Below are positions 24,238 through 52,305 of a stretch of 64,000 bases of DNA, piece after piece. Both the position numbers and the translations under genes were made by a program. The notes under the pieces were generated by a model, which saw nothing but the letters and a program-made list of their open reading frames with translations, had not been told where the DNA came from and searched no databases. The DNA comes from Lytechinus pictus. Its lineage: Eukaryota. The stretch covers positions 28,334,001-28,398,000 of the forward strand of contig NC_087245.1 in assembly GCF_037042905.1 (NCBI RefSeq), read 5' to 3'. Positions within the stretch are counted from its first letter, which is position 1, and each line of letters begins with the position of its first letter.

Positions 24238-24707
24238 AACATTTTATGTATTCGAGTCTGTGTTATACTTTATACTTCATAAAAGAAAAAATGTATTATT
24301 CAAGCACTAGCTAGCATACTGAGCGAAAAGTTCTGTCCCATCCCATGACCCCCCCCCCCTTTTTTTTTAAAACATTTTATTGGCAGAAAATTGCTTTCGG
24401 AAAGAGTGGTTACCTTTCACCTCTTTATTGTTCTTGTCAGAAAATCATTGCCCCTCCGTTTAAGGTTTTCCGGGTACACGACTGCATTTAAAACCGAAAG
24501 AAAAAAGTGTACTTATATCCGCTAGATTGTAGGCCACGGTCTGTGGTGTCATCCAAAACATGGCTCTACAGGATATCCGAACCGATATCCGAAGATGACG
24601 TAATACCACCCGGTACCATGCACTCTCTAAAACAATGAGCAATAAATGTATACAAATGAAAGTTGACCAGTTCACCCTGATCATGTTTTGATATTGAAAA
24701 AAGTAAC

Positions 24708-24853
24708 CAGGAGAGCATTTCATGAAACAATAAAGACAGTGATTTCTACTTACAAGTGTTATAAGCTACTGAAAATCCTTGCATCTGATTGGCTTAGAGC
24801 AAATTTGTCCAGTGAAAAACCATTGACAACGTAACTCATGAAACGTTCCCCCG
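24708..24853. mobile_element. Old Harbinger-like MITE fixed in all five Trf promoters
   Basis: CAG-GAGAGCATTTCATGAA...TTCATGAAACG(C/T)TCCCC imperfect TIR (best preserved in copies 4 and 5); contains CTGATTGGCT. Confidence 0.55.
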
Positions 24854-24881
24854 GTAAATAACAAACTAAAATAGCAATAAA

Positions 24882-24966
24882 ATGATTCAACCAGGTAATA
24901 CCTGGAAAAGCCTGACACGGTTTGGTACGAGGGCGGTTCTCGTCAGGGAGTGAAAGTGTATAAATA
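24882..24966 (+). promoter_or_regulatory. Trf core promoter (TATAAATA at 24959; equivalent TATA boxes at 33528, 42099, 49376, 57199)
   Basis: TATAAATA ~127 nt before the ATG in all five copies, preceded by TGATTCA, the palindrome CCAGGTA-A-TACCTGG, TGGAAAAGCC, GGG(C/T)GG and GAGTGAAAGTG. Confidence 0.7.
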
Positions 24967-25085
24967 CAATGAGCTATAACAGAATTTAATCAGGTTTGGA
25001 GCTGATCCTGTCATCCTGAGAAGCTATCAATACACGGAAAGAATTCAAAATTGCGGGACTGGAGTGACACCCCCAATACGCCAAC

Positions 25086-26916
25086 ATGGAGTTGAAAGCA
25101 ACTGTGATCGTTGCTATCCTGGCTGCACTTGCTATGTCAGGTAAGCTCTCAAATTTGTATTTCGATCATCTGAAGGTATTATTACAAGATGATATTTTGA
25201 TTATCGCAATTCATTGATAGAAATCATAACTATTTCTATTTTGTTTGATAAAAGGAGGAATAACGCTTCATATCATTACCAATCACCACTGCTGTATTAA
25301 TGGGGGAGGGGGCTAGGGGCTAGCCCCCAAACCTTCCGTGACCAAGCAAAATTTTCAATACGAGAAAGAGAGATAAGGAGTGCAAAATGATTTTATTTTC
25401 TGAATGTTAAAATTTGTCACAAATTCATATTTTCATTTTAGAAGGTCAAAAGTTTCCGTCGCGATTTTAAAAAATATTTCCCCATTTTATTACGCAAGGT
25501 TTTTATGTGTCATTATTACTATTATTATTTGGGGAAGGGGGTGATTATGTCTTTGTCAAAAGTTGTAACTCGTAATTCAACAATAATCATGATTTTCAGT
25601 ATTCTGACTTTGTTGGGGGGGGGGGGTTGCTAATACAAAAGAAAATTGCCTATGTCAAATGGCTTATATCCTAAAATCTGTCAAATATTTTCAAGTTTAA
25701 TATGACTATACATGAATAGTGTCACATCGAACCAAACAAACGATGAAAATCTTATTGTTCTTATAAATTCGGACTATAAGAACTAAATCATCATAAATCT
25801 TTAATCACATAAAATATATATGAAATATCAGACAGCAAGATATAGGCCTAGGCTCATTATTGGTAAAAATTAACATTGTAAAAACTAAGACAAATATTTA
25901 ACAGAAATATCACATCGGAAATGATTCATATCATTGGAATCCTGAAAGGCTTAAGAAACTAATAGATTAATAGAAATTATTAAGTTTTCTGTACATTTTC
26001 CTCTTTTACAGCTAATGCACGAAGAGGTGATCGTGGAGGTATGGGGCCAGGGAGAGAGAGGGGAGAGGGTCGTTTCGGAGGAAGACCTGACGGAGTGCCA
26101 ATGGGAGGGCCAAGGCGAGGAGGTGGTGGAATGATGGATGGAAGGAGGTTTGATGGCCCCGGGTTGGGGCTTGGTGCCCCTCAGAGGGACCAACGAAGAC
26201 AATTTGGTGGTCCGATGGTTGGTGGAAGAAGATCTGACGGTCCTTTCCGTGGCTCCAGACCTGAAGGAGTTGGAAGACCTTTCTTCGGTCAAGACGGAAC
26301 CAGACGTGATGGTGGAGAAGAAGAAACCGCAGATGCCTCCAAAGAGTCTAAATCAATCTTTGATCGTTTTGGACTCGGTCCGCTTTTTAGAGGACAATCA
26401 CGAGATCGGGGTCGTCTTCAGGATCAAGGAGGTCAGCATAACGACAACAGCGAAGAGGATGGAGGTCATCGTCACCATCACCATCGCTACCACCCCCACC
26501 ATCATCACCACCGTCATAATCATACTGAAGGCCAACGCCCTCACAACAAGACGGGAAATTACCCACATCGTCATCACAACAAGACCGGAGACGGGGATTG
26601 GGACGGACCAAGATTCCAGATGAGGCCTTTCCGGTTCTTCAAAAACTGGCCATTTGGAAGACACAACCGAACCGAGGAAGGATCTCACGGACATGATGGC
26701 CGCCGCCATCCCTTTGGCAAGTTCCCAGGACGCTGGGGATCACATGAAAGCGAGGAAGAAGAGGAGGAGCAGCAGCAGCAGCAGGAGTCAACAACTAGGG
26801 AAAATGCAACCCCATCTTCCCCATCGGACGTGATAACACCATCCTCCCAACCGGAAGTGATTGAGATTGCAATCAATGACAATGAAATAGATACTAATGT
26901 CATCGGACAACTGTAA
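25086..26916 (+). CDS. Trf: Transformer (185/333) immune effector, gene 1, 319 aa
   Basis: Exon 1 25086-25140 (leader MELKATVIVAILAALAMS), 871-nt GT-AG intron, exon 2 26012-26916. Gly/Arg-rich region (GGRRFDGPG-like, RPFFGQ..RR.GEEET), His-rich region with HNHT/HNKT/HNRT sequons, acidic tail ending EVIEIAIN, no Cys: the two-exon Trf architecture. Confidence 0.96.
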
Positions 26917-27121
26917 ATTGTGTTTTAAAAATGACTGATACTGTAAAAATGAAGTCTTCTATATCTTTCCTCTAGTATTGACTGATAAAAATTCCTGACG
27001 ATGTTTCATCGATACTCAGGCATCCATATATTTTTTAATCACAAAGAGATAAGAAAATTGAATGAAGATACAACACGTTTCATCATGAATTTGACCTTTA
27101 TCGTTATTGAAAGACTTGTAA

Positions 27122-27127
27122 AATAAA
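27122..27127 (+). terminator. Polyadenylation signal of Trf gene 1 (conserved after all five genes)
   Basis: AATAAA ~205 nt after the stop, followed by a GT/T-rich tract. Confidence 0.6.
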
Positions 27128-27791
27128 CATGATAAATATTATACCAAACTCGTGTTTTCATATAGCATTACTTTTTCATACACTACTACATAATTCTTAA
27201 ATAATTACTGAAAGAGAAAAGGAGAGAATGTGATATTATGGGTTGAGATATTTTAGATTTATAAATAGAGGGGGGGGGGTGGGTGGGGAAAAATAGACTC
27301 CAAATAATTATTGGAATGAGCATGGTGAAAGAAAATAGGGGAGATAGATGCATGGGAAACTATTATGTGTGTGAAGTGCTACAGACAGAAGCTTGAAAGG
27401 AGAAAGAGGGACGAGCCAGAGAAGCCTAAAGAACTGAAGAGAGGGAGTGCGATATTAATAAATAGACACATGAGAGATTGGGAGTAGAAAGATCATGAAG
27501 ATATATAGAGAGGAAAAGTGATGAATATATTAAAGAGTGAGAGAGAGATGGAAGGGGAAAGGATGGGGTTGTTACTATAGTAATATAATGAGGTAAATTG
27601 TTACAGTATCTACCCCCATCCCCATCGTCCCAATGCTCAAGTGATCGGATCGACGGACATATATTCCATTAAAACACATCTTAAAAACATGCTCATCCCC
27701 CCTCATCCTGATTATTGTTGTTAGCAACGCCTCCATCATTTCCCTCCTCAATAAATCCCTTAGCCCCTGCTTGAGTTTAGGTTATCTTTAA

Positions 27792-27997
27792 AGGGGAATC
27801 ATCACTATGACATCCCATATGTGGCCAATTTAAAGTCTCCATGAGTATAGATTATATATGATTATCAATATTTACAACTTTTAAAAATTCATAACTTTCT
27901 TGTTGTTTGTCCAATATTGTTCAAACTTTCACATATCAACTGGTCTAATTTATCTTTTTCTTATAAAAACAAGTTTTTAATTGGGTTGGATTCCCCT
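27792..27997. mobile_element. Internally deleted family-A TTAA MITE (copy at 36364-36569)
   Basis: TTAA|AGGGGAATC plus ~200 bp matching the reverse complement of 17388-17577; absent after genes 3 and 5. Confidence 0.85.
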
Positions 27998-28274
27998 TTC
28001 AGTTATTTTCCTTATTGTTTTACATTTTGTTAGTTTTTCTTTTTGGTCCCCCTATTGCTTTTAATCATATTTTTTAAATTATCATATTGTATTTTGTTGC
28101 TTTCACCAATATTGTATGTTTTTATGATTTAATTCATATGATTTTGTGCTTTTGTCATTACCATGTTTGATTGTGTATTGTACTTTTTATTTTGTGTGTT
28201 TATGGACCCCTACGAAAAACAGCATTTGCTGATAGAGTGTTCCATCCCACTAGTGGAAAATGAATATATAAATA

Positions 28275-31200
28275 TTGAATTGAATTTATTAGCAAATATC
28301 ACTGTCAGGTACAATAATTTTACAAGGAATAATACATCACATATAAACAAAACATTTGGTAATTGGAGCTAACATAAAAGCAAGATGCTAATCGAGGTTA
28401 GCCCCAAATAATGTCATTATCATAGTTTAAACAGTAAATCTAACTTAATCTCAATATTGTACATCAAATTCAGTACCAATTCTACTTATTATACTGTTGC
28501 AGAAAATTTCGATCATTTTCAGTTAACATATTTACACAATTTACAAGAAAAAAATATCTTAATTATTCACAAAAATCTTTATATAGAAATATTTGTTTTC
28601 AGGCAGTATTTTACCATACCAAATTAATTATAATCTTCCAGTAGCATTAATTTTAACGATTTGCTAAATATCTTACGACTGGGGGTGTTTCTAATATTAC
28701 TTGGCAGATTGATTGTCAATTTGTTGGCATTGCACCATGCTGTTATTGTTTAAATTGAGACGAATTTCTGATAAATCAATATGTTGTTCATCACAATTGA
28801 AAGTATGAAATAAATTTGAGTCATCTGCAAAAAGACGTAAATTGAAATAATTTGATGAGTTTGCCAGATCGTTTATATACAACAAGAACAAAATTGGACC
28901 CAAAACTGATCCTTGTGGAATACCGCATGAAATCGACCTGTATTCGGAATTTACACCATCATAATTAACAAATTGCTTTCTGTTTCGTAAATAATCATTA
29001 AACCATTCTACTGCCTTACCACGAATGCCATAGTGTTCTAGTTTCTTAATGAGAATAGAATGATTAATCGTATCAAAAGCTTTAGCAAAATCGATGAATA
29101 TTCCTACTGTCACCTTTCCTTCATCAGTATATCTTGTAATTTGATTAATCAGATTTATCAGTGAAAGTTTCGTACTGTATCCATTTCTAAAACCATATTG
29201 GTGTTTATACAATATTTCATTCTTTTCTATGAATTTCATCAATCGTGCATTCACTAGTTTTTCAAATATTTTGCTAATCGCGGGTAAAATCGATATTGGT
29301 CTATAATTTTCAGGTAATTTTTTATCTCCCTTTTTGAAAACTGGTATAACTCTTGCAACTTTTAATTTATCTGGAAAAATGCATTTGGTAAATGATAGAT
29401 TGAATATATGCGAAAGAGGTTTGCAAATACAATTCATAGCATATATCAATAGTCGAACTGATATGTCACCATAGCCACTTGCTTTAGATTGATCAAGAGT
29501 GTATAACATTTCTTTAACTTCTGAACTTGTTTATTGGCAGGAAGAAAAATGTTTGACTAATGTATGGACCCATGAACTCTCGGTAATTAACATTTGGCTC
29601 CTCAATTTTCTCAGCTAGATTTTTCCCAATAGTAGAGAAATAATTGTTGAGGAATTCAGATTCGAGCCGCTATTTTTATTCAAAAGTTCATTGATATGAC
29701 TCCAAGTTTTCTTTGAATCTTTTTTGTCTGCTTTAAACTTATGTTCATAATGCATTTGCTTTGCTTCTTTAAGACGGTTGTTAACTGATTTCTGTATTTA
29801 TTATATTTATTCAAACAATCTTTATTATAATTTGATTTTATAACTTGAAAAAAAAGTTTGTGCTTTGTCGATATTGAACGCTTAATACATCGTGTTATCC
29901 AAGGTTTATTTTTCTTTTTCTGTTTAAGACATTTTGTCTCAATAGGAGCATGTTTATTACAAACAAATAAGATCTGTCTTTGGAAAATATTATAAGCTTC
30001 ATTAGGATCCATACATTCTAAAACGCTTTTCCTAAAATCAGTAGTAACATGTAGATCATTACAAAATGAATCTATTGAAAAATTATAAAATTTTCTCCGT
30101 GTTACACTATTTTTTCTTTGTTTAACACACTTGAAGTTCTTAAAAACGGAGTAAACTGGGAGATGGTCAGAAATATCTACTTCAATACACCCTGCTTGAA
30201 TAGGATAGGCATATATATTTGTATAGAAATGGTCAATGAGAGATATGCTAGAACTTGTTATTCTTGTTGGACTTGTCATCAACTGACGTAAGCCATAACA
30301 TTCTGTCATGTGAATAAACTCACAACTTTCAGTTGGAGATAAAAGATTTATATTGAAATCTCCTACAATATTGCAATGGTTTCTGTCTAGATTCAAGTTA
30401 TGCAATTGCTCGTTGAGATCAAGACTAAATTCTTCAAAGTTACTGTTTGGTTTTCTATAAATTACCCCGAATATGATACTCGCATCCTGAATGAGAATTT
30501 TCAGCCATAATGATTCAGCATTGTGCAAGGACAAATTAGGCATTCGTTTGTAATTAAGTCCTGAATGAATATAAGCACCAACTCCTCCTCCTCTTGTAAT
30601 ATTTCTACATTATAATTCAAGATTATACCATGGCATTGAAAACTGATTTATGTCTTTAACATTCCAAACTTCTGATAATGCGAATATCAAAAAATGATTT
30701 AAATTCATCTTCATATACTTCTTTCAGCATTTCAAAATTGCGATTCAAAGATCTCACATTCACGTGCGAAATGAAGAATGACTGAGGAAAAGCTTTTGTC
30801 GAGGAAAATTTTTCAGTAGAAAGTGATGCTGTTGTTATTTGAAATGGATCAAGTTCTTCGTTATCATTAAGCGAAATTATGTTGATAAGATTAAATTGGT
30901 GGTGGTATTGGTGGTGATTTTTTTACCTGATTGCTAAGAAAGCATGAATGCTTGTAAGCAAGCAACCAGAGGACCGACGGCGGTCCTCTCCGAAGGACCT
31001 GGTACTGAGGATTAATGCCTTACCAAAGGGCACTAGCGCACCAAGTGGGAATCGAACCCGGGTCACCGGAATACGAGTCCCCCGCTCTACCGACTGAGCT
31101 ATCGCGCCTCCTATGTAGTATCCATTACGTTCATAAGCATTACGTAAAAGATAAAATAAAGACATTACATATTTACAGTTATTTCAGCTTCGAAATATCT

Positions 31201-31389
31201 TCTTTCGAGAGTATGATGACAGGAGCTCATTTCTCGTCATTCCTGACATATATATTTTCCATTGTAAGTCCATAAGAACTTGTACCCAGCATTTTTTCTA
31301 GCTCCATTGGCGAGTCCTAGCAGCTCTCTTGTTGCACCGACGAGGTTCTCGTTGACAAAGGTTGATTCCAAGATCCGCAGAAGTTTATT
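28275..31389 (-). mobile_element. 5'-truncated, decayed CR1/L2-group LINE (ORF1 C-terminus, APE endonuclease, RT)
   Basis: RT motifs YRPISILP, FIDFAKAFD, PQGSVLGP, LFADD (28697-29509). APE motifs GDFNIN, IDH, SDH (29680-30543). ORF1-like tail FVNENL...YKFLWTYNGK (~31250-31360). 3' end AATAAATTCAATTCAA. 10-bp TSD TATATAAATA (28265-28274/31390-31399). Empty site after genes 3, 4 and 5. Confidence 0.92.
30924..31111 (-). mobile_element. tRNA-derived SINE lying between LINE ORF1 and ORF2 (copy at 39496-39683)
   Basis: GGAGGCGCGATAGCTCAGTCGGTAGAGC (A box)...GGTTCGATTCCC (B box), then a non-tRNA body and an A-rich end. Confidence 0.8.
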
Positions 31390-32398
31390 TATATAAATAA
31401 ACAAATAAAAAATAAATGATATGAATGTAACTTACATCTGGTAAATATCTCGAGGTGAGGTGAGTCATTGGCCGGTCTGCTTGGAGTTTGCCACGATGTT
31501 GTCGGAAAGAGTCCGCTCCCAGTACATGCCCGCCAGAAATTACATAGATTGCAGCTTTCTCCTATAGGCCTATGTAGGGAAGTGTCTGGCGTATTTAATA
31601 CCTTTTGGAAATAGATCACCCAGAGTGGAACAAGATTTATAATCAGCATAGGGAATGTCAATGGTAATTGTACACAGTCTTGGCAGTTGGCTGAAGACTT
31701 TCTCGCTGGAACACTGAGTTGCATGGGTTTACACGTACTCCCCCAATACGTCTTTAATCAATCCAGGCATTCCCACTGATGCTTTTCACAAAGCAGTCTG
31801 GACTCTGGGGTGAGCAATTATAATCATTCCCCATGGAAGCTTACATCCATTTGACTTTAACTGATTTCTCTCCTTTCATCTTTAAACCCTTCTGAATACA
31901 ATCTCATTAAAATTCTCTGAGCTACTCTACTACTCTCATATATACAAATTCCAATTAAAATTACTTCTTTTATTCTACTCCCGAACCCTCTTTACAAATT
32001 AATTTTCCAAACTGAACATCATGCACAGCTATAGGCTACATTTTCAATCACATACAAAACAAACAGTATTAAGTACCCTACAAAGATCTGAAGTTCATTA
32101 ACTTGGTTACCAGCAAAACTGAAATTCTTTTCTTTAATGCTAGCATTAACTCTCCCATTCAATCTTAACTAAGCCAGTCAACTTAACCCTATATACATTA
32201 TAAAAATATTGTGTAAAATTGCTCCATGAGGGTAATCATGTGTCCAACCAACATTGGGAATTTCTTTTGGGCATTTTTATCTATTCAGTGTGATGACTGA
32301 AAATTTTGCCCATTCTAAATAACCATACTGGCTTCCCACATTGAGTAAAATACTGCCCCACATTGATTGGGCACATATTATTTGTAATGCCCGGGCAC

Positions 32399-32629
32399 CA
32401 TAGCCCTGGGAAGCGGGGGTGCTGGGAGTGCTGAAGCACCTCAAAAATTTCCTTGGGGATGCTGCGTGTACTATTTTCCATAGGCAGCACCCCCAGGTAT
32501 TCTGAAAGATGTGTAAAATTGGGAAAACAGGTAACCAAAAAGACCTTCATTTTTTTATTGAAACCCCCTTATTTTTGCTTTTAAAATTTACATCAGCACC
32601 CCCAGTCAAGAATCGTTCCCAGGGCCCTG
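32399..32629. mobile_element. Small hAT-type MITE present in the array spacers (also ~40971, ~53583, ~61596)
   Basis: CA..GCCC...GGGCCCTG ends; 8-bp TSD CCGGGCAC. Confidence 0.7.
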
Positions 32630-33654
32630 CCGGGCACGCGGCTACGAAATAACGCAGCATTATGTAAGTACATGTCAGACCAAAAATAAAAACGTAATAT
32701 GTACAAAGTCAATACAAAATCTCTTTCATCTAAAATTCACAAATGAGTGAAAATTCTCACTTGATTGTCGATAGCATTTAATATTATACTATTTATGACT
32801 GAATAATGTCACCGATGATATTTGTCCCAAAAAAAAACAATTAAAGATTTAAAAAACAAAGAAATGAATGAGAAAAATAATTTCATTAGCGTAATTTTTG
32901 GCTTGTAGTTGATAAGAATGCCACAAAGAATATTTTCACCAAAAATTAGCTTTCTATAGGAGTGAATTAGAGCAAAAAGTATGATGAATAAATAATTCAT
33001 ATAAAAAGAAATATATGATAATTTATTTCCGTACATGCAGTGGTGTAGATTAAGTCATCCTCTACCTTCGTGCACTTTTCGTCGTGATCGCTCGATCCGC
33101 GGCCGAGATCTTAAAGGGGGGGGGGGGGCTCTACAGGATATCCGATCCGATATCCGAAGATGACGTAAAACCACCCGGTACCAGGCACTCTCTAAAACAA
33201 TGAGCAATACATTTATGCAAATGAAAGTTGACCAGTTCACCCTGATCATGGTTCGATATTGAAAAGAGTAACCAGGAGAGCATTTCAAGAAACAATAAAG
33301 TCAGTGATTTCCATTGACAAGTGTTATAAGCTACTGAAAATCCTTGCATCTGATTGGCTTAGAGCAAATTTGTCCAGTGAAAAACCATTGACACGATGCC
33401 TTCATGAAACGTTCCCCCGCTAAATAACAACAAACTAAAATAGCAATAAAATGATTCAACCAGGTAATACCTGGAAAAGCCTGACACGGTTTGGTACGAG
33501 GGTGGTTCTCGTCAGGGAGTGAAAGTGTATAAATACAGTGAGCTATAACAGAATTTAATCAGGTTTGGAGCTGATCCTGTCATCCTGAGAAGCTATCAAT
33601 ACACGGAAAGAATTCAAAATTGCGGGACTGGAGTGACACCCCCAATACGCCAAC

Positions 33655-35488
33655 ATGGAGTTGAAAGCAACTGTGATCCTTGCTATCCTGGCTGCACTTG
33701 CTATGTCAGGTAAGCCTTCAAATTTGTATTTCGATCATCTGAAGGTATTATTACAAGATGATATTTTGATTATCGCAATTCATTGATAGAAATCATAACT
33801 ATTTCTATTTTGTTTGATAAAAGGAGGAATAACGCTTCATATCATTATCAATCACCACTGCTGTATTAATGGGGGAGGGGGCTAGGGGCTAGCCCCCAAA
33901 CCTTCCGTGACCAAGCAAAATTTTCAATACGAGAAAGAGAGATAAGTAGTGCAAAATGATTTTATTTTCTGAATGTTAAAATTTGTCACAAATTCATATT
34001 TTCATTTTAGAAGGTCAAAAGTTTCCGTCGCGATTTTAAAAAATATTTCCCCATTTTATTACGCAAGGTTTTTATGTGTCTTTATTACTATTATTATTTG
34101 GGGAAGGGGGTGATTATGTCTTTGTCAAAAGTTGTAACTCGTAATTCAACAATAATCATGATTTTCAGTATTCTGACTTTGTTGGGGGGGGGGGGGGGTT
34201 GCTAATACAAAAGAAAATTGCCTATGTCAAATGGCTTATATCCTAAAATCTGTCAAATATTTTCAAGTTTAATATGACTATACATGAATAGTGTCACATC
34301 GAACCAAACAAACGATGAAAATCTTATTGTTCTTATAAATTCGGACTATAAGAACTAAATCATCATAAATCTTTAATCACATAAAATATATATGAAATAT
34401 CAGACAGCAAGATATAGGCCTAGGCTCATTATTGGTAAAAATTAACATTGTAAAAACTAAGACAAATATTTAACAGAAATATCACATCGGAAATGATTCA
34501 TATCATTGGAATCCTGAAAGGCTTAAGAAACTAATAGATTAATAGAAATTATTAAGTTTTCTGTACATTTTCCTCTTTTACAGCTAATGCACGAAGAGGT
34601 GATCGTGGAGGTATGGGGCCAGGGAGAGAGAGGGGAGAGGGTCGTTTCGGAGGAAGACCTGACGGAGTGCCAATGGGAGGGCCAAGGCGAGGAGGTGGTG
34701 GAATGATGGATGGAAGGAGGTTTGATGGCCCCGGGTTGGGGCTTGGTGCCCCTCAGAGGGACCAACGAAGACAATTTGGTGGTCCGATGGTTGGTGGAAG
34801 AAGATCTGACGGTCCTTTCCGTGGCTCCAGACCTGAAGGAGTTGGAAGACCTTTCTTCGGTCAAGACGGAACCAGACGTGATGGTGGAGAAGAAGAAACC
34901 GCAGATGCCTCCAAAGAGTCTAAATCAATCTTTGATCGTTTTGGACTCGGTCCGCTTTTTAGAGGACAATCACGAGATCGGGGTCGTCTTCAGGATCAAG
35001 GAGGTCAGCATAACGACAACAGCGAAGAGGATGGAGGTCATCGTCACCATCACCATCGCTACCACCCCCACCATCATCACCACCGTCATAATCATACTGA
35101 AGGCCAACGCCCTCACAACAAGACGGGAAATTACCCACATCGTCATCACAACAAGACCGGAGACGGGGATTGGGACGGACCAAGATTCCAGATGAGGCCT
35201 TTCCGGTTCTTCAAAAACTGGCCATTTGGAAGACACAACCGAACCGAGGAAGGATCTCACGGACATGATGGCCGCCGCCATCCCTTTGGCAAGTTCCCAG
35301 GACGCTGGGGATCACATGAAAGCGAGGAAGAAGAGGAGGAGCAGCAGCAGCAGCAGGAGTCAACAACTAGGGAAAATGCAACCCCATCTTCCCCATCGGA
35401 CGTGATAACACCATCCTCCCAACCGGAAGTGATTGAGATTGCAATCAATGACAATGAAATAGATACTAATGTCATCGGACAACTGTAA
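33655..35488 (+). CDS. Trf: Transformer gene 2, 319 aa
   Basis: Exon 1 33655-33709 (MELKATVILAILAALAMS), 874-nt intron, exon 2 34584-35488 with the same protein as gene 1. Confidence 0.95.
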
Positions 35489-36846
35489 ATTGTGTTTTAA
35501 AAATGACTGATACTGTAAAAATGAAGTCTTCTATATCTTTCCTCTAGTATTGACTGATAAAAATTCCTGACGATGTTTCATCGATACTCAGGCATCCATA
35601 TATTTTTTAATCACAAAGAGATAAGAAAATTGAATGAAGATACAACACGTTTCATCATGAATTTGACCTTTATCGTTATTGAAAGACTTGTAAAATAAAC
35701 ATGATAAATATTATACCAAACTCGTGTTTTCATATAGCATTACTTTTTCATACACTACTACATAATTCTTAAATAATTACTGAAAGAGAAAAGGAGAGAA
35801 TGTGATATTATGGGTTGAGATATTTTAGATTTATAAATAGAGGGGGGGGGGTGGGTGGGGAAAAATAGACTCCAAATAATTATTGGAATGAGCATGGTGA
35901 AAGAAAATAGGGGAGATAGATGCATGGGAAACTATTATGTGTGTGAAGTGCTACAGACAGAAGCTTGAAAGGAGAAAGAGGGACGAGCCAGAGAAGCCTA
36001 AAGAACTGAAGAGAGGGAGTGCGATATTAATAAATAGACACATGAGAGATTGGGAGTAGAAAGATCATGAAGATATATAGAGAGGAAAAGTGATGAATAT
36101 ATTAAAGAGTGAGAGAGAGATGGAAGGGGAAAGGATGGGGTTGTTACTATAGTAATATAATGAGGTAAATTGTTACAGTATCTACCCCCATCCCCATCGT
36201 CCCAATGCTCAAGTGATCGGATCGACGGACATATATTCCATTAAAACACATCTTAAAAACATGCTCATCCCCCCTCATCCTGATTATTGTTGTTAGCAAC
36301 GCCTCCATCATTTCCCTCCTCAATAAATCCCTTAGCCCCTGCTTGAGTTTAGGTTATCTTTAAAGGGGAATCATCACTATGACATCCCATATGTGGCCAA
36401 TTTAAAGTCTCCATGAGTATAGATTATATATGATTATCAATATTTACAACTTTTAAAAATTCATAACTTTCTTGTTGTTTGTCCAATATTGTTCAAACTT
36501 TCACATATCAACTGGTCTAATTTATCTTTTTCTTATAAAAACAAGTTTTTAATTGGGTTGGATTCCCCTTTCAGTTATTTTCCTTATTGTTTTACATTTT
36601 GTTAGTTTTTCTTTTTGGTCCCCCTATTGCTTTTAATCATATTTTTTAAATTATCATATTGTATTTTGTTGCTTTCACCAATATTGTATGTTTTTATGAT
36701 TTAATTCATATGATTTTGTGCTTTTGTCATTACCATGTTTGATTGTGTATTGTACTTTTTATTTTGTGTGTTTATGGACCCCTACGAAAAACAGCATTTG
36801 CTGATAGAGTGTTCCATCCCACTAGTGGAAAATGAATATATAAATA

Positions 36847-39800
36847 TTGAATTGAATTTATTAGCAAATATCACTGTCAGGTACAATAATTTTACAAGGA
36901 ATAATACATCACATATAAACAAAACATTTGGTAATTGGAGCTAACATAAAAGCAAGATGCTAATCGAGGTTAGCCCCAAATAATGTCATTATCATAGTTT
37001 AAACAGTAAATCTAACTTAATCTCAATATTGTACATCAAATTCAGTACCAATTCTACTTATTATACTGTTGCAGAAAATTTCGATCATTTTCAGTTAACA
37101 TATTTACACAATTTACAAGAAAAAAATATCTTAATTATTCACAAAAATCTTTATATAGAAATATTTGTTTTCAGGCAGTATTTTACCATACCAAATTAAT
37201 TATAATCTTCCAGTAGCATTAATTTTAACGATTTGCTAAATATCTTACGACTGGGGGTGTTTCTAATATTACTTGGCAGATTGATTGTCAATTTGTTGGC
37301 ATTGCACCATGCTGTTATTGTTTAAATTGAGACGAATTTCTGATAAATCAATATGTTGTTCATCACAATTGAAAGTATGAAATAAATTTGAGTCATCTGC
37401 AAAAAGACGTAAATTGAAATAATTTGATGAGTTTGCCAGATCGTTTATATACAACAAGAACAAAATTGGACCCAAAACTGATCCTTGTGGAATACCGCAT
37501 GAAATCGACCTGTATTCGGAATTTACACCATCATAATTAACAAATTGCTTTCTGTTTCGTAAATAATCATTAAACCATTCTACTGCCTTACCACGAATGC
37601 CATAGTGTTCTAGTTTCTTAATGAGAATAGAATGATTAATCGTATCAAAAGCTTTAGCAAAATCGATGAATATTCCTACTGTCACCTTTCCTTCATCAGT
37701 ATATCTTGTAATTTGATTAATCAGATTTATCAGTGAAAGTTTCGTACTGTATCCATTTCTAAAACCATATTGGTGTTTATACAATATTTCATTCTTTTCT
37801 ATGAATTTCATCAATCGTGCATTCACTAGTTTTTCAAATATTTTGCTAATCGCGGGTAAAATCGATATTGGTCTATAATTTTCAGGTAATTTTTTATCTC
37901 CCTTTTTGAAAACTGGTATAACTCTTGCAACTTTTAATTTATCTGGAAAAATGCATTTGGTAAATGATAGATTGAATATATGCGAAAGAGGTTTGCAAAT
38001 ACAATTCATAGCATATATCAATAGTCGAACTGATATGTCACCATAGCCACTTGCTTTAGATTGATCAAGAGTGTATAACATTTCTTTAACTTCTGAACTT
38101 GTTTATTGGCAGGAAGAAAAATGTTTGACTAATGTATGGACCCATGAACTCTCGGTAATTAACATTTGGCTCCTCAATTTTCTCAGCTAGATTTTTCCCA
38201 ATAGTAGAGAAATAATTGTTGAGGAATTCAGATTCGAGCCGCTATTTTTATTCAAAAGTTCATTGATATGACTCCAAGTTTTCTTTGAATCTTTTTTGTC
38301 TGCTTTAAACTTATGTTCATAATGCATTTGCTTTGCTTCTTTAAGACGGTTGTTAACTGATTTCTGTATTTATTATATTTATTCAAACAATCTTTATTAT
38401 AATTTGATTTTATAACTTGAAAAAAAAGTTTGTGCTTTGTCGATATTGAACGCTTAATACATCGTGTTATCCAAGGTTTATTTTTCTTTTTCTGTTTAAG
38501 ACATTTTGTCTCAATAGGAGCATGTTTATTACAAACAAATAAGATCTGTCTTTGGAAAATATTATAAGCTTCATTAGGATCCATACATTCTAAAACGCTT
38601 TTCCTAAAATCAGTAGTAACATGTAGATCATTACAAAATGAATCTATTGAAAAATTATAAAATTTTCTCCGTGTTACACTATTTTTTCTTTGTTTAACAC
38701 ACTTGAAGTTCTTAAAAACGGAGTAAACTGGGAGATGGTCAGAAATATCTACTTCAATACACCCTGCTTGAATAGGATAGGCATATATATTTGTATAGAA
38801 ATGGTCAATGAGAGATATGCTAGAACTTGTTATTCTTGTTGGACTTGTCATCAACTGACGTAAGCCATAACATTCTGTCATGTGAATAAACTCACAACTT
38901 TCAGTTGGAGATAAAAGATTTATATTGAAATCTCCTACAATATTGCAATGGTTTCTGTCTAGATTCAAGTTATGCAATTGCTCGTTGAGATCAAGACTAA
39001 ATTCTTCAAAGTTACTGTTTGGTTTTCTATAAATTACCCCGAATATGATACTCGCATCCTGAATGAGAATTTTCAGCCATAATGATTCAGCATTGTGCAA
39101 GGACAAATTAGGCATTCGTTTGTAATTAAGTCCTGAATGAATATAAGCACCAACTCCTCCTCCTCTTGTAATATTTCTACATTATAATTCAAGATTATAC
39201 CATGGCATTGAAAACTGATTTATGTCTTTAACATTCCAAACTTCTGATAATGCGAATATCAAAAAATGATTTAAATTCATCTTCATATACTTCTTTCAGC
39301 ATTTCAAAATTGCGATTCAAAGATCTCACATTCACGTGCGAAATGAAGAATGACTGAGGAAAAGCTTTTGTCGAGGAAAATTTTTCAGTAGAAAGTGATG
39401 CTGTTGTTATTTGAAATGGATCAAGTTCTTCGTTATCATTAAGCGAAATTATGTTGATAAGATTAAATTGGTGGTGGTATTGGTGGTGATTTTTTTACCT
39501 GATTGCTAAGAAAGCATGAATGCTTGTAAGCAAGCAACCAGAGGACCGACGGCGGTCCTCTCCGAAGGACCTGGTACTGAGGATTAATGCCTTACCAAAG
39601 GGCACTAGCGCACCAAGTGGGAATCGAACCCGGGTCACCGGAATACGAGTCCCCCGCTCTACCGACTGAGCTATCGCGCCTCCTATGTAGTATCCATTAC
39701 GTTCATAAGCATTACGTAAAAGATAAAATAAAGACATTACATATTTACAGTTATTTCAGCTTCGAAATATCTTCTTTCGAGAGTATGATGACAGGAGCTC

Positions 39801-39961
39801 ATTTCTCGTCATTCCTGACATATATATTTTCCATTGTAAGTCCATAAGAACTTGTACCCAGCATTTTTTCTAGCTCCATTGGCGAGTCCTAGCAGCTCTC
39901 TTGTTGCACCGACGAGGTTCTCGTTGACAAAGGTTGATTCCAAGATCCGCAGAAGTTTATT
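36847..39961 (-). mobile_element. Second copy of the same LINE insertion, created by the segmental duplication
   Basis: Same ORFs (37269-38081, 38252-39115), same lesions and same TSD at offset 8572. Confidence 0.92.
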
Positions 39962-42225
39962 TATATAAATAAACAAATAAAAAATAAATGATATGAATGT
40001 AACTTACATCTGGTAAATATCTCGAGGTGAGGTGAGTCATTGGCCGGTCTGCTTGGAGTTTGCCACGATGTTGTCGGAAAGAGTCCGCTCCCAGTACATG
40101 CCCGCCAGAAATTACATAGATTGCAGCTTTCTCCTATAGGCCTATGTAGGGAAGTGTCTGGCGTATTTAATACCTTTTGGAAATAGATCACCCAGAGTGG
40201 AACAAGATTTATAATCAGCATAGGGAATGTCAATGGTAATTGTACACAGTCTTGGCAGTTGGCTGAAGACTTTCTCGCTGGAACACTGAGTTGCATGGGT
40301 TTACACGTACTCCCCCAATACGTCTTTAATCAATCCAGGCATTCCCACTGATGCTTTTCACAAAGCAGTCTGGACTCTGGGGTGAGCAATTATAATCATT
40401 CCCCATGGAAGCTTACATCCATTTGACTTTAACTGATTTCTCTCCTTTCATCTTTAAACCCTTCTGAATACAATCTCATTAAAATTCTCTGAGCTACTCT
40501 ACTACTCTCATATATACAAATTCCAATTAAAATTACTTCTTTTATTCTACTCCCGAACCCTCTTTACAAATTAATTTTCCAAACTGAACATCATGCACAG
40601 CTATAGGCTACATTTTCAATCACATACAAAACAAACAGTATTAAGTACCCTACAAAGATCTGAAGTTCATTAACTTGGTTACCAGCAAAACTGAAATTCT
40701 TTTCTTTAATGCTAGCATTAACTCTCCCATTCAATCTTAACTAAGCCAGTCAACTTAACCCTATATACATTATAAAAATATTGTGTAAAATTGCTCCATG
40801 AGGGTAATCATGTGTCCAACCAACATTGGGAATTTCTTTTGGGCATTTTTATCTATTCAGTGTGATGACTGAAAATTTTGCCCATTCTAAATAACCATAC
40901 TGGCTTCCCACATTGAGTAAAATACTGCCCCACATTGATTGGGCACATATTATTTGTAATGCCCGGGCACCATAGCCCTGGGAAGCGGGGGTGCTGGGAG
41001 TGCTGAAGCACCTCAAAAATTTCCTTGGGGATGCTGCGTGTACTATTTTCCATAGGCAGCACCCCCAGGTATTCTGAAAGATGTGTAAAATTGGGAAAAC
41101 AGGTAACCAAAAAGACCTTCATTTTTTTATTGAAACCCCCTTATTTTTGCTTTTAAAATTTACATCAGCACCCCCAGTCAAGAATCGTTCCCAGGGCCCT
41201 GCCGGGCACGCGGCTACGAAATAACGCAGCATTATGTAAGTACATGTCAGACCAAAAATAAAAACGTAATATGTACAAAGTCAATACAAAATCTCTTTCA
41301 TCTAAAATTCACAAATGAGTGAAAATTCTCACTTGATTGTCGATAGCATTTAATATTATACTATTTATGACTGAATAATGTCACCGATGATATTTGTCCA
41401 AAAAAAAAACAATTAAAGATTTAAAAAACAAAGAAATGAATGAGAAAAATAATTTCATTAGCGTAATTTTTGGCTTGTAGTTGATAAGAATGCCACAAAG
41501 AATATTTTCACCAAAAATTAGCTTTCTATAGGAGTGAATTAGAGCAAAAAGTATGATGAATAAATAATTCATATAAAAAGAAATATATGATAATTTATTT
41601 CCGTACATGCAGTGGTGTAGATTAAGTCATCCTCTACCTTCGTGCACTTTTCGTCGTGATCGCTCGATCCGCGGCCGAGATCTTAAAGGGGGGGGGGGGC
41701 TCTACAGGATATCCGATCCGATATCCGAAGATGACGTAAAACCACCCGGTACCAGGCACTCTCTAAAACAATGAGCAATACATTTATGCAAATGAAAGTT
41801 GACCAGTTCACCCTGATCATGGTTCGATATTGAAAAGAGTAACCAGGAGAGCATTTCAAGAAACAATAAAGTCAGTGATTTCCATTGACAAGTGTTATAA
41901 GCTACTGAAAATCCTTGCATCTGATTGGCTTAGAGCAAATTTGTCCAGTGAAAAACCATTGACACGATGCCTTCATGAAACGTTCCCCCGCTAAATAACA
42001 ACAAACTAAAATAGCAATAAAATGATTCAACCAGGTAATACCTGGAAAAGCCTGACACGGTTTGGTACGAGGGTGGTTCTCGTCAGGGAGTGAAAGTGTA
42101 TAAATACAGTGAGCTATAACAGAATTTAATCAGGTTTGGAGCTGATCCTGTCATCCTGAGAAGCTATCAATACACGGAAAGAATTCAAAATTGCGGGACT
42201 GGAGTGACACCCCCAATACGCCAAC

Positions 42226-44057
42226 ATGGAGTTGAAAGCAACTGTGATCCTTGCTATCCTGGCTGCACTTGCTATGTCAGGTAAGCCTTCAAATTTGTAT
42301 TTCGATCATCTGAAGGTATTATTACAAGATGATATTTTGATTATCGCAATTCATTGATAGAAATCATAACTATTTCTATTTTGTTTGATAAAAGGAGGAA
42401 TAACGCTTCATATCATTATCAATCACCACTGCTGTATTAATGGGGGAGGGGGCTAGGGGCTAGCCCCCAAACCTTCCGTGACCAAGCAAAATTTTCAATA
42501 CGAGAAAGAGAGATAAGTAGTGCAAAATGATTTTATTTTCTGAATGTTAAAATTTGTCACAAATTCATATTTTCATTTTAGAAGGTCAAAAGTTTCCGTC
42601 GCGATTTTAAAAAATATTTCCCCATTTTATTACGCAAGGTTTTTATGTGTCTTTATTACTATTATTATTTGGGGAAGGGGGTGATTATGTCTTTGTCAAA
42701 AGTTGTAACTCGTAATTCAACAATAATCATGATTTTCAGTATTCTGACTTTGTTGGGGGGGGGGGGGTTGCTAATACAAAAGAAAATTGCCTATGTCAAA
42801 TGGCTTATATCCTAAAATCTGTCAAATATTTTCAAGTTTAATATGACTATACATGAATAGTGTCACATCGAACCAAACAAACGATGAAAATCTTATTGTT
42901 CTTATAAATTCGGACTATAAGAACTAAATCATCATAAATCTTTAATCACATAAAATATATATGAAATATCAGACAGCAAGATATAGGCCTAGGCTCATTA
43001 TTGGTAAAAATTAACATTGTAAAAACTAAGACAAATATTTAACAGAAATATCACATCGGAAATGATTCATATCATTGGAATCCTGAAAGGCTTAAGAAAC
43101 TAATAGATTAATAGAAATTATTAAGTTTTCTGTACATTTTCCTCTTTTACAGCTAATGCACGAAGAGGTGATCGTGGAGGTATGGGGCCAGGGAGAGAGA
43201 GGGGAGAGGGTCGTTTCGGAGGAAGACCTGACGGAGTGCCAATGGGAGGGCCAAGGCGAGGAGGTGGTGGAATGATGGATGGAAGGAGGTTTGATGGCCC
43301 CGGGTTGGGGCTTGGTGCCCCTCAGAGGGACCAACGAAGACAATTTGGTGGTCCGATGGTTGGTGGAAGAAGATCTGACGGTCCTTTCCGTGGCTCCAGA
43401 CCTGAAGGAGTTGGAAGACCTTTCTTCGGTCAAGACGGAACCAGACGTGATGGTGGAGAAGAAGAAACCGCAGATGCCTCCAAAGAGTCTAAATCAATCT
43501 TTGATCGTTTTGGACTCGGTCCGCTTTTTAGAGGACAATCACGAGATCGGGGTCGTCTTCAGGATCAAGGAGGTCAGCATAACGACAACAGCGAAGAGGA
43601 TGGAGGTCATCGTCACCATCACCATCGCTACCACCCCCACCATCATCACCACCGTCATAATCATACTGAAGGCCAACGCCCTCACAACAAGACGGGAAAT
43701 TACCCACATCGTCATCACAACAAGACCGGAGACGGGGATTGGGACGGACCAAGATTCCAGATGAGGCCTTTCCGGTTCTTCAAAAACTGGCCATTTGGAA
43801 GACACAACCGAACCGAGGAAGGATCTCACGGACATGATGGCCGCCGCCATCCCTTTGGCAAGTTCCCAGGACGCTGGGGATCACATGAAAGCGAGGAAGA
43901 AGAGGAGGAGCAGCAGCAGCAGCAGGAGTCAACAACTAGGGAAAATGCAACCCCATCTTCCCCATCGGACGTGATAACACCATCCTCCCAACCGGAAGTG
44001 ATTGAGATTGCAATCAATGACAATGAAATAGATACTAATGTCATCGGACAACTGTAA
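42226..44057 (+). CDS. Trf: Transformer gene 3, 319 aa
   Basis: Exon 1 42226-42280, 872-nt intron, exon 2 43153-44057; protein identical to gene 2. Confidence 0.95.
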
Positions 44058-45448
44058 ATTGTGTTTTAAAAATGACTGATACTGTAAAAATGAAGTCTTC
44101 CATATCTTTCCTCTAGTATTGACTGATAAAAATTCCTGACGATGTTTCATCGATACTCAGGCATCCATATATTTTTTAATCACAAAGAGACAAGAAAATT
44201 GAATGAAGATACAACACGTTTCATCATGAATTTGACCTTTATCATTATTGAAAGACTTGTAAAATAAACATGATAAATATCATACCAAACTTATGTTCTT
44301 TCATAGCTTTACTTTTTCATACACTATACTAGATAATTTTTACATAATTTCTGAAAGAGAAAAGGAGAAAATGTGATATTATGGGTTGAGATATTTTAGA
44401 TTTATATAGAGGGGGGGGGTGGATGGGGAAAAGGAGACTCCAAATAATTATTGGAGTGAGCATGGTGAAAGAAAATAGGGGAGATAGATGCATGGGAAAC
44501 TATTATGTGTGTGAAGTGCTACAGACAGAAGCTTGAAAGGAGAAAGAGGGACGAGCCAGAGAAGCCTAAAGAACTGAAGAGAGGGAGTGCGATATTAATA
44601 AATAGACACATGAGAGATTGGGAGTAGAAAGATCATGAAGATATATAGAGAGGAAAAGTGATGAATATATTAAAGAGTGAGAGAGAGATGGAAGGGGAAA
44701 GGATGGGGTTGTTACTATAGTAATATAATGAGGTAAATTGTTACAGTATCTACCCCCATCCCCATCGTCCCAATGCTCAAGTGATCGGATCGACGGACAT
44801 ATATTCCATTAAAACACATCTTAAAAACATGCTCATCCCCCCTCATCCTGATTATTGTTGTTAGCAACGCCTCCATCATTTCCCTCCTCAATCAATCCCT
44901 TAGCCCCTGCTTGAGTTTAGGTTATCTTTAAGTTATTGTCCTTATTGTTTTACATTTTGTTAGTTTTTCTTTTAAGTCCCCCTATTGCTTTTAATCAAAT
45001 TTTGTTTTTATTATCATATTGTATTTTGTTGCTTTCACCAATATTGTATGTTTTTATGATTTAATTCATATGATTTTGTGCTTTTGTCATTACCATGTTT
45101 GATTGTGTATTGTACTTTTTATTTTGTGTGTTTATGGACCCCTACGAAAAACAGCATTTGCTGATAGAGTGCTCCATCCCACTCGTGGAAAATAAATATA
45201 TAAATAAATACATAAAAAATAAATGATATGAATGTAACTTACATCTGGTACATATCTCGAGGTGAGGTGAGTCATTGGCCCTACTATTTGTGATCTTTTA
45301 TTATAGAAAAAATAAATAATTCAAAATCGAAATTATACACATGTATCCTCGAATTTCGAAATATATATAAACAGATAGTTTTTGTTAAGAACTTGGATAG
45401 GAAAAGAAAAGGCATACCGGCCCGACAATACTCGAATTCGCATCTAGC

Positions 45449-52130: not shown

Positions 52131-52305
52131 AGAGATGGCCCACCTAATGAATATTCATGACGACTGTTTTCACAAAATATTGATAAACTTTAAAATTAAA
52201 TAACTTTGTTATTTTTTTCCGATTTTTAAGAAATCTTCAGCATTTTGCTGAGTGAATTCTACTCTATTTATTAAGCTATAAATATTTTCAGCCTGGACCA
52301 CCCCT
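52131..52305. mobile_element. Internally deleted family-B TTAA MITE
   Basis: TTAA|AGAGATGG joined to the right arm of the element seen at 62257-63426. Confidence 0.85.

What the first reader, a model, noticed from the sequence alone, without database searches (positions are those of the whole stretch)
33655..35531. Gene 2 is a chimera: 5' end of gene 3 plus 3' end of gene 1 (unequal crossover signature)
Seen: up to 34081, gene 2 carries gene-3 alleles (leader ATC-CTT vs ATC-GTT, gtaagcctt vs gtaagctct, GGGTGG vs GGGCGG, gtgtcttt vs gtgtcatt). From 35532 on it carries gene-1 alleles (gtcttctata vs gtcttccata, MITE-A, LINE). The ~1.45-kb interval between (25513-26959 = 34082-35531 = 42653-44100, including all of exon 2) looks identical in all three genes apart from a poly-G length. 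Inference: misaligned crossover between genes 1 and 3 inside a previously homogenised exon-2 tract created gene 2 and duplicated the spacer very recently.
Basis: partly seen in the sequence, partly recalled or inferred. Interest (0 to 1): 0.75.

Follow-up and report, generated by a model that had tools for sequence, protein, structure and literature searches.

The report
Recombinant middle gene in sea-urchin Trf array
Three neighbouring copies of a sea-urchin immune gene (Trf, formerly 185/333) show the signature of a very recent misaligned crossover that added a hybrid middle gene and an 8.6-kb spacer; this is a known way for such families to grow, and I could not confirm that the extra copy physically exists because no reads from the sequenced animal were available.

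Summary
Aligning the three units gives 28 substitutions and 3 indels in the 5' part (24581-25512) where gene 2 equals gene 3 and differs from gene 1. Next comes a 1447-bp tract that is identical in all three genes apart from a poly-G length. After it, 24 substitutions, 2 small indels and a 210-bp MITE insertion group gene 2 with gene 1. No site is discordant (P about 5e-15). The 8569-bp segment 25513-34081 recurs at 34082-42652 with one substitution and two homopolymer length changes.

The genes belong to the Trf/185-333 immune-effector family. The closest protein in the database is from Lytechinus pictus.

Best reading (about 0.72): homology-driven unequal exchange inside the identical tract, between an upstream and a downstream paralogue, produced a hybrid of the "anti-Lepore" type. 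Whether the tract was homogenised before or after the exchange cannot be told.

The chimera does not change the protein much. Exon 2 lies entirely inside the identical tract, so all three genes encode the same mature protein. Gene 2 combines gene 3's promoter and leader with gene 1's 3' UTR.

Main rival (about 0.2): the assembler went round a repeat loop once too often. No reads of the source animal were served, so neither depth nor spanning reads could be checked.

This is a new member of a known kind and of modest interest.

The parts
24562..25512 (+). Segment 'a': the 5' flank, exon 1 (25086-25140) and first part of the intron of gene 1. It is specific to gene 1, and homology with the other units begins at 24562.
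   Evidence: It differs from both gene 2 and gene 3 at 28 of 951 substitution sites (2.94%).
25513..26959 (+). Tract T, copy 1: the rest of the intron, all of exon 2 (26012-26916) and 43 nt of 3' UTR of gene 1.
   Evidence: 0 of 1447 substitutions against copies 2 and 3. Genes 1 and 3 agree at 88 consecutive sites that vary elsewhere in the family; permutation P < 1/2000.
26960..33126 (+). Segment 'x' plus spacer S, copy 1: the 3' UTR and flank of gene 1, a MITE (27791-28000), a LINE fragment (about 28275-31389, minus strand) and the upstream region of gene 2.
   Evidence: It is identical to 35532-41697 except at 32828 and one poly-G length. RVT_1 matches at E = 6e-31 and there is a weak endonuclease hit. 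The MITE has 11-nt inverted ends.
33127..34081 (+). Segment 'b', copy 1: promoter region, 5' UTR, exon 1 (33655-33709) and first part of the intron of gene 2. It carries gene-3 alleles.
   Evidence: 0 of 955 differences from gene 3 (41698-42652); 28 substitutions and 3 indels from gene 1.
34082..35531 (+). Tract T, copy 2: the interval that must contain the exchange point. It holds the rest of the intron, exon 2 (34584-35488) and the start of the 3' UTR of gene 2.
   Evidence: It is identical to the other two copies apart from the poly-G at 34184-34198 (15 G, against 12 and 13).
35532..41697 (+). Segment 'x' plus spacer S, copy 2: a gene-1-type 3' UTR and flank, the MITE (36363-36572), the LINE fragment (about 36847-39961, minus strand) and the upstream region of gene 3.
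   Evidence: All 24 substitutions, 2 indels and the MITE group gene 2 with gene 1 against gene 3. The spacer is identical to copy 1.
41698..42652 (+). Segment 'b', copy 2: the 5' flank, exon 1 (42226-42280) and first part of the intron of gene 3, the downstream parent.
42653..44100 (+). Tract T, copy 3: the rest of the intron, exon 2 (43153-44057) and the start of the 3' UTR of gene 3.
44101..44931 (+). Segment 'y': the gene-3-specific 3' UTR and flank. The MITE site is empty here, and the downstream spacer is different and lacks the LINE fragment.
   Evidence: 24 of 828 (2.90%) substitutions from genes 1 and 2. The empty site is shown.

Best explanation
The window holds a head-to-tail array of Trf (185/333) immune-effector genes: five in the window and a sixth just beyond it.

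The ancestral chromosome had gene A (a-T-x), then a 6.2-kb spacer S, then gene B (b-T-y). A and B are paralogues whose flanks differ by about 2.9%, but they share a 1.45-kb tract T (half the intron plus all of exon 2) made identical by gene conversion.

A misaligned, homology-driven exchange took place inside T, between B on one chromatid or homologue and A on the other. The mechanism could be unequal crossing-over, or equally a template switch or break-induced replication using the same homology. The product is A - S - [b-T-x] - S - B. That is a hybrid middle gene with B's promoter, 5' UTR and leader and A's 3' UTR, plus a second copy of the spacer.

The event is very recent. The two copies differ at 1 of 8569 bases, about 250 times less than A differs from B, so it probably still segregates as a copy-number variant.

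The consequence is dosage and regulatory reshuffling, not a new protein. All three genes encode the same mature protein, and gene 1 differs only by V9 versus L9 in the signal peptide.

What is shown: the site pattern, the identity of the copies and the gene models. What is inferred: the exchange itself, its timing, and that T was homogenised before rather than after it.
For: - The 28+3 sites that group genes 2 and 3 are followed by the identical tract and then 24+3 sites that group genes 1 and 2, with no discordant site. P = 4.7e-15.
- Segment 25513-34081 against 34082-42652 shows 1 substitution and 2 homopolymer lengths in 8.57 kb. The period of 8569-8572 bp equals the A-B distance.
- Polarising with genes 4-6 shows derived alleles in both lineages on both sides, so a/b and x/y are true paralogue lineages.
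- The tract is not simply slow-evolving. It differs from genes 4-6 by 2.5-3.8%, so 20-33 differences between genes 1 and 3 would be expected and none is seen, P <= 2.5e-9. The run test gives 88 consecutive agreeing sites, P < 1/2000.
- The LINE fragment and the MITE are in both spacer copies but not behind genes 3 and 5, so the duplication is younger than those insertions.
- The genome holds no other Trf locus that could have donated 'a' or 'y' by conversion.
- The copies differ in poly-G length by up to 3 nt and at one base. This is weak support for three physically separate copies.
- The family is already known for segmental duplications and for recombination between gene ends (PMC8634487; PMC5491942).
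Against: - There is no physical confirmation. The public runs found hold at most 22% of the stretch's sampled words, and all are served as contigs of other animals.
- The contigs that lie on exon 2 carry gene-4/5-type alleles, and none bridges the tract with both flanks.
- Every difference between the two 8.57-kb copies sits in or next to a homopolymer. That is also what consensus noise on a falsely repeated segment would look like.
- The hybrid has no diagnostic junction sequence shorter than 1.45 kb, so short-read data can never show it.
Confidence: 0.72

Rival explanations
1. Assembly artefact. The real chromosome has only genes A and B. Because both contain the identical 1.45-kb tract, the assembly graph has a loop (T - x - S - b - T), and the assembler traversed it twice. 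That would create a hybrid gene and a second spacer that do not exist.
For: - A loop traversed twice gives exactly the observed structure, with the switch interval inside the tract.
- The two copies are identical except at homopolymers.
- There are no source reads to check depth or spanning reads.
- The assembly has no second haplotype copy of the locus to compare with.
Against: - The window has no gaps and lies in a 44-Mb sequence. That suggests long reads far longer than 1.45 kb, though this is my inference and the sequencing platform was not established. If so, a b-T-x path should exist only if reads carry it.
- Falsely retained haplotypes would differ by the high heterozygosity of sea urchins, not by 0.01%.
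- The poly-G lengths of 12, 15 and 13 and one base difference between the copies are more than a sequence emitted twice should show.
Confidence: 0.2
2. Three old genes reshaped by gene conversion alone. Under this reading a three-gene array already existed, and long conversion events copied gene 3's upstream half onto gene 2 and gene 1's downstream half plus spacer onto gene 2's.
For: Gene conversion clearly acts in this array. The tract shared by genes 1 and 3 shows it, and there are weaker signs between exon 2 of gene 6 and genes 1/3 (15 agreeing sites, P about 0.01-0.02).
Against: It needs conversion tracts of more than 7 kb that carry a 3.1-kb LINE fragment and a MITE and leave no residual difference. 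Known conversion tracts are much shorter. One exchange explains everything at once.
Confidence: 0.03
3. The duplication is real but arose without homology, for example by end-joining of a staggered break or by rolling or slipped replication. Its ends would fall inside the tract only by coincidence.
For: Tandem duplications can arise without homology, and the sequence alone does not reveal the enzymology.
Against: Both ends would have to fall at exactly homologous positions of two 1.45-kb tracts 8.57 kb apart, with no junction scar, insertion or microhomology footprint. The junction is seamless. Homology-guided exchange predicts this; non-homologous joining does not.
Confidence: 0.03

Closest known systems
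Haemoglobin anti-Lepore hybrids (duplication product of unequal crossing-over between the delta- and beta-globin genes); from established knowledge
   Same: The hybrid gene sits between two intact parental genes. [quoted passage not shown] The intergenic spacer is duplicated, and a reciprocal single-hybrid deletion (Lepore type) is predicted.
   Different: Here the exchange lies in a tract that includes the whole coding exon 2 and is identical in both parents. The hybrid therefore encodes no new mature protein; only the promoter/leader and the 3' UTR are recombined. Physical proof is lacking.
Segmental duplications of the D1/E2 SpTrf (Sp185/333) genes in Strongylocentrotus purpuratus (PMC8634487; PMC5491942)
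   Same: It is the same gene family: two exons (leader plus mature protein), Gly-rich and His-rich regions, and an RGD motif. The genes are tandemly clustered with near-identical copies inside segmental duplications, and recombination between the 5' and 3' ends of genes has been inferred statistically.
   Different: - The S. purpuratus duplications are 2.7-4.5 kb, up to 10% mismatched, and their edges are placed at GA or GAT short tandem repeats.
- Here the unit is 8.57 kb and 99.99% identical.
- Its edges lie inside the gene, with no long GA/GAT repeat at them.
- The parental and hybrid genes can all be read directly.
- The species is a Lytechinus-like urchin, a genus for which the literature searched reports only a single Trf gene, taken from the L. 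variegatus assembly.
Hybrid genes and copy-number variation in the human KIR cluster and the red/green opsin array through non-allelic homologous recombination (KIR: Traherne et al. 2010, seen only as a citation; opsins from established knowledge)
   Same: An immune or sensory tandem array expands and contracts by misaligned exchange between paralogues. This creates hybrid genes and copy-number polymorphism.
   Different: Those hybrids usually change the protein, and they are documented in many haplotypes. Here there is one assembly only and no coding change.

Membership tests
Trf / 185-333 immune-effector gene family of euechinoid sea urchins | Significant sequence similarity to known Sp185/333, SiTrf and HeTrf proteins | tested here: met
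   Exon 2 of gene 2 matches Sp185/333 proteins at E = 2e-48 to 1e-34 (43-53% identity). It also matches S. intermedius and H. erythrogramma 185/333 proteins, and an L. pictus protein at 89% identity. It belongs to no Pfam family, as expected for this family.
Trf / 185-333 immune-effector gene family of euechinoid sea urchins | Two-exon structure: a short leader exon and one exon that encodes the whole mature protein | tested here: met
   Exon 1 is 55 nt with a hydrophobic leader. The intron is 874 nt with GT..AG ends. Exon 2 is 905 nt and the product is 319 aa. A spliced transcript contig of a gene-4/5-type paralogue uses the homologous joint 33706>34581.
Trf / 185-333 immune-effector gene family of euechinoid sea urchins | Gly-rich N-terminal region, RGD motif, His-rich C-terminal region | tested here: met
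   The translation shows an RGD at residues 24-26, a Gly/Arg-rich first half, and His runs around residues 160-200. The RGD lies nearer the N-terminus than in SpTrf.
Trf / 185-333 immune-effector gene family of euechinoid sea urchins | [quoted passage not shown] | tested here: not met
   Only a 14-nt GA-rich motif lies about 620 nt behind each stop codon (27535, 36107, 44675, 51875, 59747). There are no GA or GAT arrays at the unit edges. This is a feature of the S. purpuratus loci rather than of the protein family.
Hybrid gene from non-allelic homologous recombination (duplication product) | The hybrid lies between both parents in direct orientation; its 5' part matches the downstream parent and its 3' part matches the upstream parent | tested here: met
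   Gene 2 against gene 3 shows 0/955 differences in the 5' part. Gene 2 against gene 1 shows 0/831 in the 3' part. The opposite comparisons show 28 and 24 substitutions.
Hybrid gene from non-allelic homologous recombination (duplication product) | A single switch interval inside a stretch of high identity, and no discordant informative sites | tested here: met
   The switch falls within 34082-35531. The only sites where gene 2 stands alone are poly-G lengths.
Hybrid gene from non-allelic homologous recombination (duplication product) | The intergenic segment is duplicated with a period equal to the distance between the paralogues, and the junction is seamless | tested here: met
   The copies are 8569 and 8571 bp, with 1 substitution.
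Hybrid gene from non-allelic homologous recombination (duplication product) | Physical existence: reads that span the hybrid junction and read depth matching the copy number | not testable with these tools
   Only contigs of other animals were served. The look-ups by exact protein sequence returned nothing.
Hybrid gene from non-allelic homologous recombination (duplication product) | Reciprocal deletion (a-T-y single gene) or the ancestral two-gene haplotype present in the population | not testable with these tools
   No other assembly or long-read data set of this species could be reached.

The most novel reading that the evidence does not exclude
The 1.45-kb identical tract is a live recombination hotspot, so Trf copy number in this species rises and falls between individuals (conceivably even between germ line and immune cells). 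The array would then evolve by homogenisation and dosage (three genes, one mature protein), in contrast with the diversifying SpTrf family of the purple sea urchin.
Probability: 0.3. Interest if true: 0.5.

Novelty: new member of a known kind. Interest (0 to 1): 0.3.

Why it matters
Gene duplication, recombination and instability have been inferred for the Trf/185-333 family mostly from statistics and dot plots in one species. If this duplication is real, it gives a case that can be read base by base. Both parents, the hybrid and the exchange interval are all visible, the event is dated as very young, and the species is one whose Trf cluster I did not find described in the searched papers.

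It also shows that here the duplication edges lie inside the gene and not at short tandem repeats. And it shows that the immediate product is extra dosage with swapped regulatory ends, not a new protein.

It is also a practical warning. The middle gene cannot be told from its neighbours with short reads, so expression and copy-number studies of this locus need long reads.

Tried and rejected
- Reads: the look-up of sequencing runs (after a busy first try) returned only contigs of other animals, holding at most 0.22 of the sampled words. Read laying on 33100-36400 showed no contig joining both flanks across the tract.
- The contigs that lay on exon 2 (X14, X2) carry gene-4/5-type alleles at 9 of 9 and 7 of 22 variant sites, and gene-1/2 alleles at none of them. 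They therefore say nothing about genes 1-3, their expression or the hybrid. I dropped my first impression that X14 showed gene 2 to be expressed.
- Look-ups of the exact protein in other assemblies were blank, possibly because records of this genome are withheld.
- Pfam on exon 2 gave nothing meaningful.
- A search for a second haplotype or another Trf locus in the same assembly found none.
- Searches for a paper on the Lytechinus Trf cluster or on the assembly method did not find one.
- I considered and rejected two ideas. Haplotype-retention false duplication fails because the copies are far too similar. In-situ divergence of gene 1's 5' end or gene 3's 3' end from a triplicated ancestor fails because it would need a donor that the genome does not contain.
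Full report
**What is in the window**

A self-comparison shows five head-to-tail units, each holding one gene on the + strand:
- gene 1: about 24562-27790
- gene 2: about 33127-36363
- gene 3: about 41698-44931
- gene 4: about 49024-52130
- gene 5: about 56847-60003

A search of the whole assembly (811.7 Mb in 368 sequences; the window is C1:28334001-28398000) finds a sixth gene just past the window's end and no other locus.

Exon 2 of gene 2 matches Sp185/333 (SpTransformer) proteins of Strongylocentrotus purpuratus at E = 2e-48 to 1e-34. It also matches 185/333 proteins of S. intermedius and Heliocidaris. Its best match, at 89% identity, is a Lytechinus pictus protein, and that protein is 97% identical to gene 5. 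So this is a Trf/185-333 immune-effector cluster of a Lytechinus-like sea urchin. The exact species is not established.

The gene models are identical in layout: a 55-nt leader exon, an 871-874-nt GT..AG intron, a 905-nt exon 2 and a 319-aa product.
- gene 1: exon 1 25086-25140, exon 2 26012-26916
- gene 2: exon 1 33655-33709, exon 2 34584-35488
- gene 3: exon 1 42226-42280, exon 2 43153-44057

The product has a hydrophobic leader, an RGD motif, a Gly/Arg-rich half and a His-rich half.

**Checking the observation**

A three-way alignment with every variable column listed gives an unusually clean picture.
- From the start of homology (24562 / 33127 / 41698) to 25512 / 34081 / 42652, all 28 substitutions and 3 indels set gene 1 apart from genes 2 and 3, which are identical to each other.
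- The next 1447 bp (25513-26959 = 34082-35531 = 42653-44100) are identical in all three genes except for a poly-G run of 12, 15 and 13 G.
- From 26960 / 35532 / 44101 on, all 24 substitutions, 2 small indels and a 210-bp insertion with 11-nt inverted ends (a MITE) set gene 3 apart from genes 1 and 2.
- No site contradicts this pattern. The chance of such a perfect partition of 28+24 sites is 4.7e-15.

'GGGTGG vs GGGCGG' was not found, and the real sites in that stretch are 33848 and 33947.

The segment 25513-34081 recurs at 34082-42652. The only differences are one substitution at the edge of a poly-A run (32828 C versus 41400 A) and two poly-G lengths.

The spacer holds a 3.1-kb LINE fragment on the minus strand. 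It has a reverse-transcriptase match at E = 6e-31 and a weak endonuclease hit. The fragment is absent from the homologous spacers behind genes 4 and 5.

**Are the differences real paralogue differences?**

I polarised each informative site with genes 4-6. In the 5' part, 13 sites are derived in gene 1 and 15 in genes 2/3. In the 3' part, both the gene-1/2 form and the gene-3 form carry derived states. These are therefore two diverged lineages on each side, not errors in one copy.

Flank divergence between genes 1 and 3 is 2.94% on the 5' side and 2.90% on the 3' side.

**Is the identical tract more than conservation?**

The tract differs from genes 4-6 by 2.5-3.8%. Scaled to the flanks, 20-33 differences between genes 1 and 3 would be expected, and none is seen (P <= 2.5e-9).

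A run test that leaves gene 2 out finds genes 1 and 3 agreeing at 88 consecutive sites that vary elsewhere in the family, between 25519 and 26937 (P < 1/2000).

The tract has therefore been homogenised between the two parental genes, independently of the hybrid.

**Most likely mechanism**

Write gene 1 as a-T-x, gene 3 as b-T-y and the spacer as S. The present order is a-T-x - S - b-T-x - S - b-T-y.

One misaligned, homology-guided exchange inside T, between the downstream gene of one chromatid or homologue and the upstream gene of the other, converts a-T-x - S - b-T-y into exactly this order. This is the duplication ('anti-Lepore') product of unequal crossing-over. The reciprocal product would be a single a-T-y gene.

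Template switching or break-induced replication using the same homology would leave the same result and cannot be told apart from crossing-over.

The two copies differ at 1 of 8569 bases, about 250 times less than the parental flanks differ. The event is therefore very young, and if real it is probably still a copy-number polymorphism.

But the opposite order is equally parsimonious: an exchange at one edge of T, followed by a conversion whose other end falls in sequence that is already identical and so cannot be seen. The sequence does not exclude it.

**What the chimera changes**

All of exon 2 lies in the identical tract. Genes 2 and 3 therefore encode identical proteins, and gene 1 differs only by Val-9 versus Leu-9 in the signal peptide. 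The mature proteins are all the same.

Gene 2 joins gene 3's upstream region, 5' UTR and leader to gene 1's 3' UTR and downstream region. The effect is extra dosage and shuffled regulatory ends, not a new protein.

**The main rival and why it stays open**

If the true chromosome had only genes A and B, the shared tract would form a loop in an assembly graph. An assembler that went round it twice would print exactly this structure. All differences between the copies sit at homopolymers, which fits consensus noise as well as it fits very young copies.

Several things argue against this rival.
- The window has no gaps and sits in a 44-Mb sequence. That suggests long reads that dwarf a 1.45-kb repeat, although the sequencing platform was not established.
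- A falsely retained haplotype would be far more diverged than 0.01%.
- Poly-G lengths differing by up to 3 nt plus one base change are more than a sequence emitted twice should show.

I could not test it. The runs found are contigs of other animals holding at most 22% of the sampled words. When laid on 33100-36400, no contig joins both flanks across the tract. The contigs on exon 2 carry gene-4/5-type alleles (9 of 9 variant sites for X14), so they belong to other paralogues or alleles. They confirm the splice joint for the family (33706>34581, GT..AG) but say nothing about genes 1-3.

Exact-protein look-ups in other assemblies were blank. I put the artefact at about 0.2. If the hybrid is real, the number of middle units could also be higher than assembled, because only reads longer than about 19 kb can count them.

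**Other rivals**

Conversion among three old genes would need scarless tracts of more than 7 kb carrying a LINE fragment and a MITE. A non-homologous tandem duplication would need both ends at exactly homologous positions with no junction scar. The genome also holds no other Trf locus that could have donated the 'a' or 'y' segments. These two rivals together get about 0.06.

**Comparison with what is known**

In S. purpuratus the SpTrf genes are clustered, and several lie in 2.7-4.5-kb segmental duplications with up to 10% mismatch. The edges of those duplications are placed at GA or GAT short tandem repeats (PMC8634487; PMC5491942). Recombination between the 5' and 3' ends of genes has been inferred statistically. 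[quoted passage not shown]

The present case is the same kind of event in the same family, with these differences:
- the unit is 8.57 kb and essentially undiverged
- the edges lie inside the gene
- no long GA or GAT arrays flank the units, only a 14-nt GA-rich motif about 620 nt behind each stop codon
- both parents and the hybrid can be read directly

The papers I could search mention only a single Trf gene, taken from the L. variegatus assembly, for the genus Lytechinus. I found no description of this six-gene cluster.

The general mechanism is textbook: globin Lepore/anti-Lepore, opsin arrays and KIR hybrids.

**Verdict**

This is a new member of a known kind and of modest interest.

Noticed in passing
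L013:1409-4524 (window coordinates 65409-68524 if the window were extended): A sixth full-length Trf gene lies just beyond the window's end, 94% identical to gene 2. Its exon 2 is the closest of the outlying genes to genes 1-3 (1.66% divergence). Further 3'-flank fragments follow it.
   Followed up: partly
window 26161-26535 (exon 2) versus gene 6: Genes 1/3 and gene 6 agree at 15 consecutive family-variable sites (permutation P about 0.01-0.02). This hints at an older conversion tract within exon 2 and at recurrent homogenisation in the array.
   Followed up: partly
window 58207-59094 (gene 5, exon 2): The nearest database protein (L. pictus, 97% identical to gene 5) is named 'serine/threonine-protein phosphatase 1 regulatory subunit 10-like'. 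For a Trf/185-333 protein this looks like a misnomer caused by low-complexity Gly/His-rich sequence.
   Followed up: no
window 33453-33706 joined to 34581-34920, and 34978-35678 (contigs of run X14): A spliced, transcript-like contig of another animal uses the predicted intron borders and ends near 35678. Its alleles are of gene-4/5 type, so a gene-4/5-like Trf gene appears to be expressed in that sample.
   Followed up: partly
window 27535-27548, 36107-36120, 44675-44688, 51875-51888, 59747-59760: The same 14-nt GA-rich motif lies about 620 nt behind the stop codon of every gene. It may be a vestige of the GA short tandem repeats that flank SpTrf genes in S. purpuratus.
   Followed up: no
window 52126-52300 (behind gene 4) versus 27791-28000: Gene 4 carries a different insertion of about 170 bp at exactly the site where genes 1 and 2 carry the MITE, while genes 3 and 5 have the empty site. 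This is either a diverged copy of an old insertion or a repeatedly hit target site.
   Followed up: no
window 28275-31389 and 36847-39961, minus strand: A LINE fragment with reverse-transcriptase and endonuclease ORFs (28697-29509, 29680-30543) is inserted in the gene 1-2 and gene 2-3 spacers. It is absent from the homologous spacers behind genes 4 and 5, so it predates the duplication but is younger than the array.
   Followed up: partly
window 33322-33374: Thousands of contigs from every run pile up here, with word depths in the tens of thousands. This is a short, highly repeated element (probably another MITE end) in the upstream region of genes 2 and 3.
   Followed up: no
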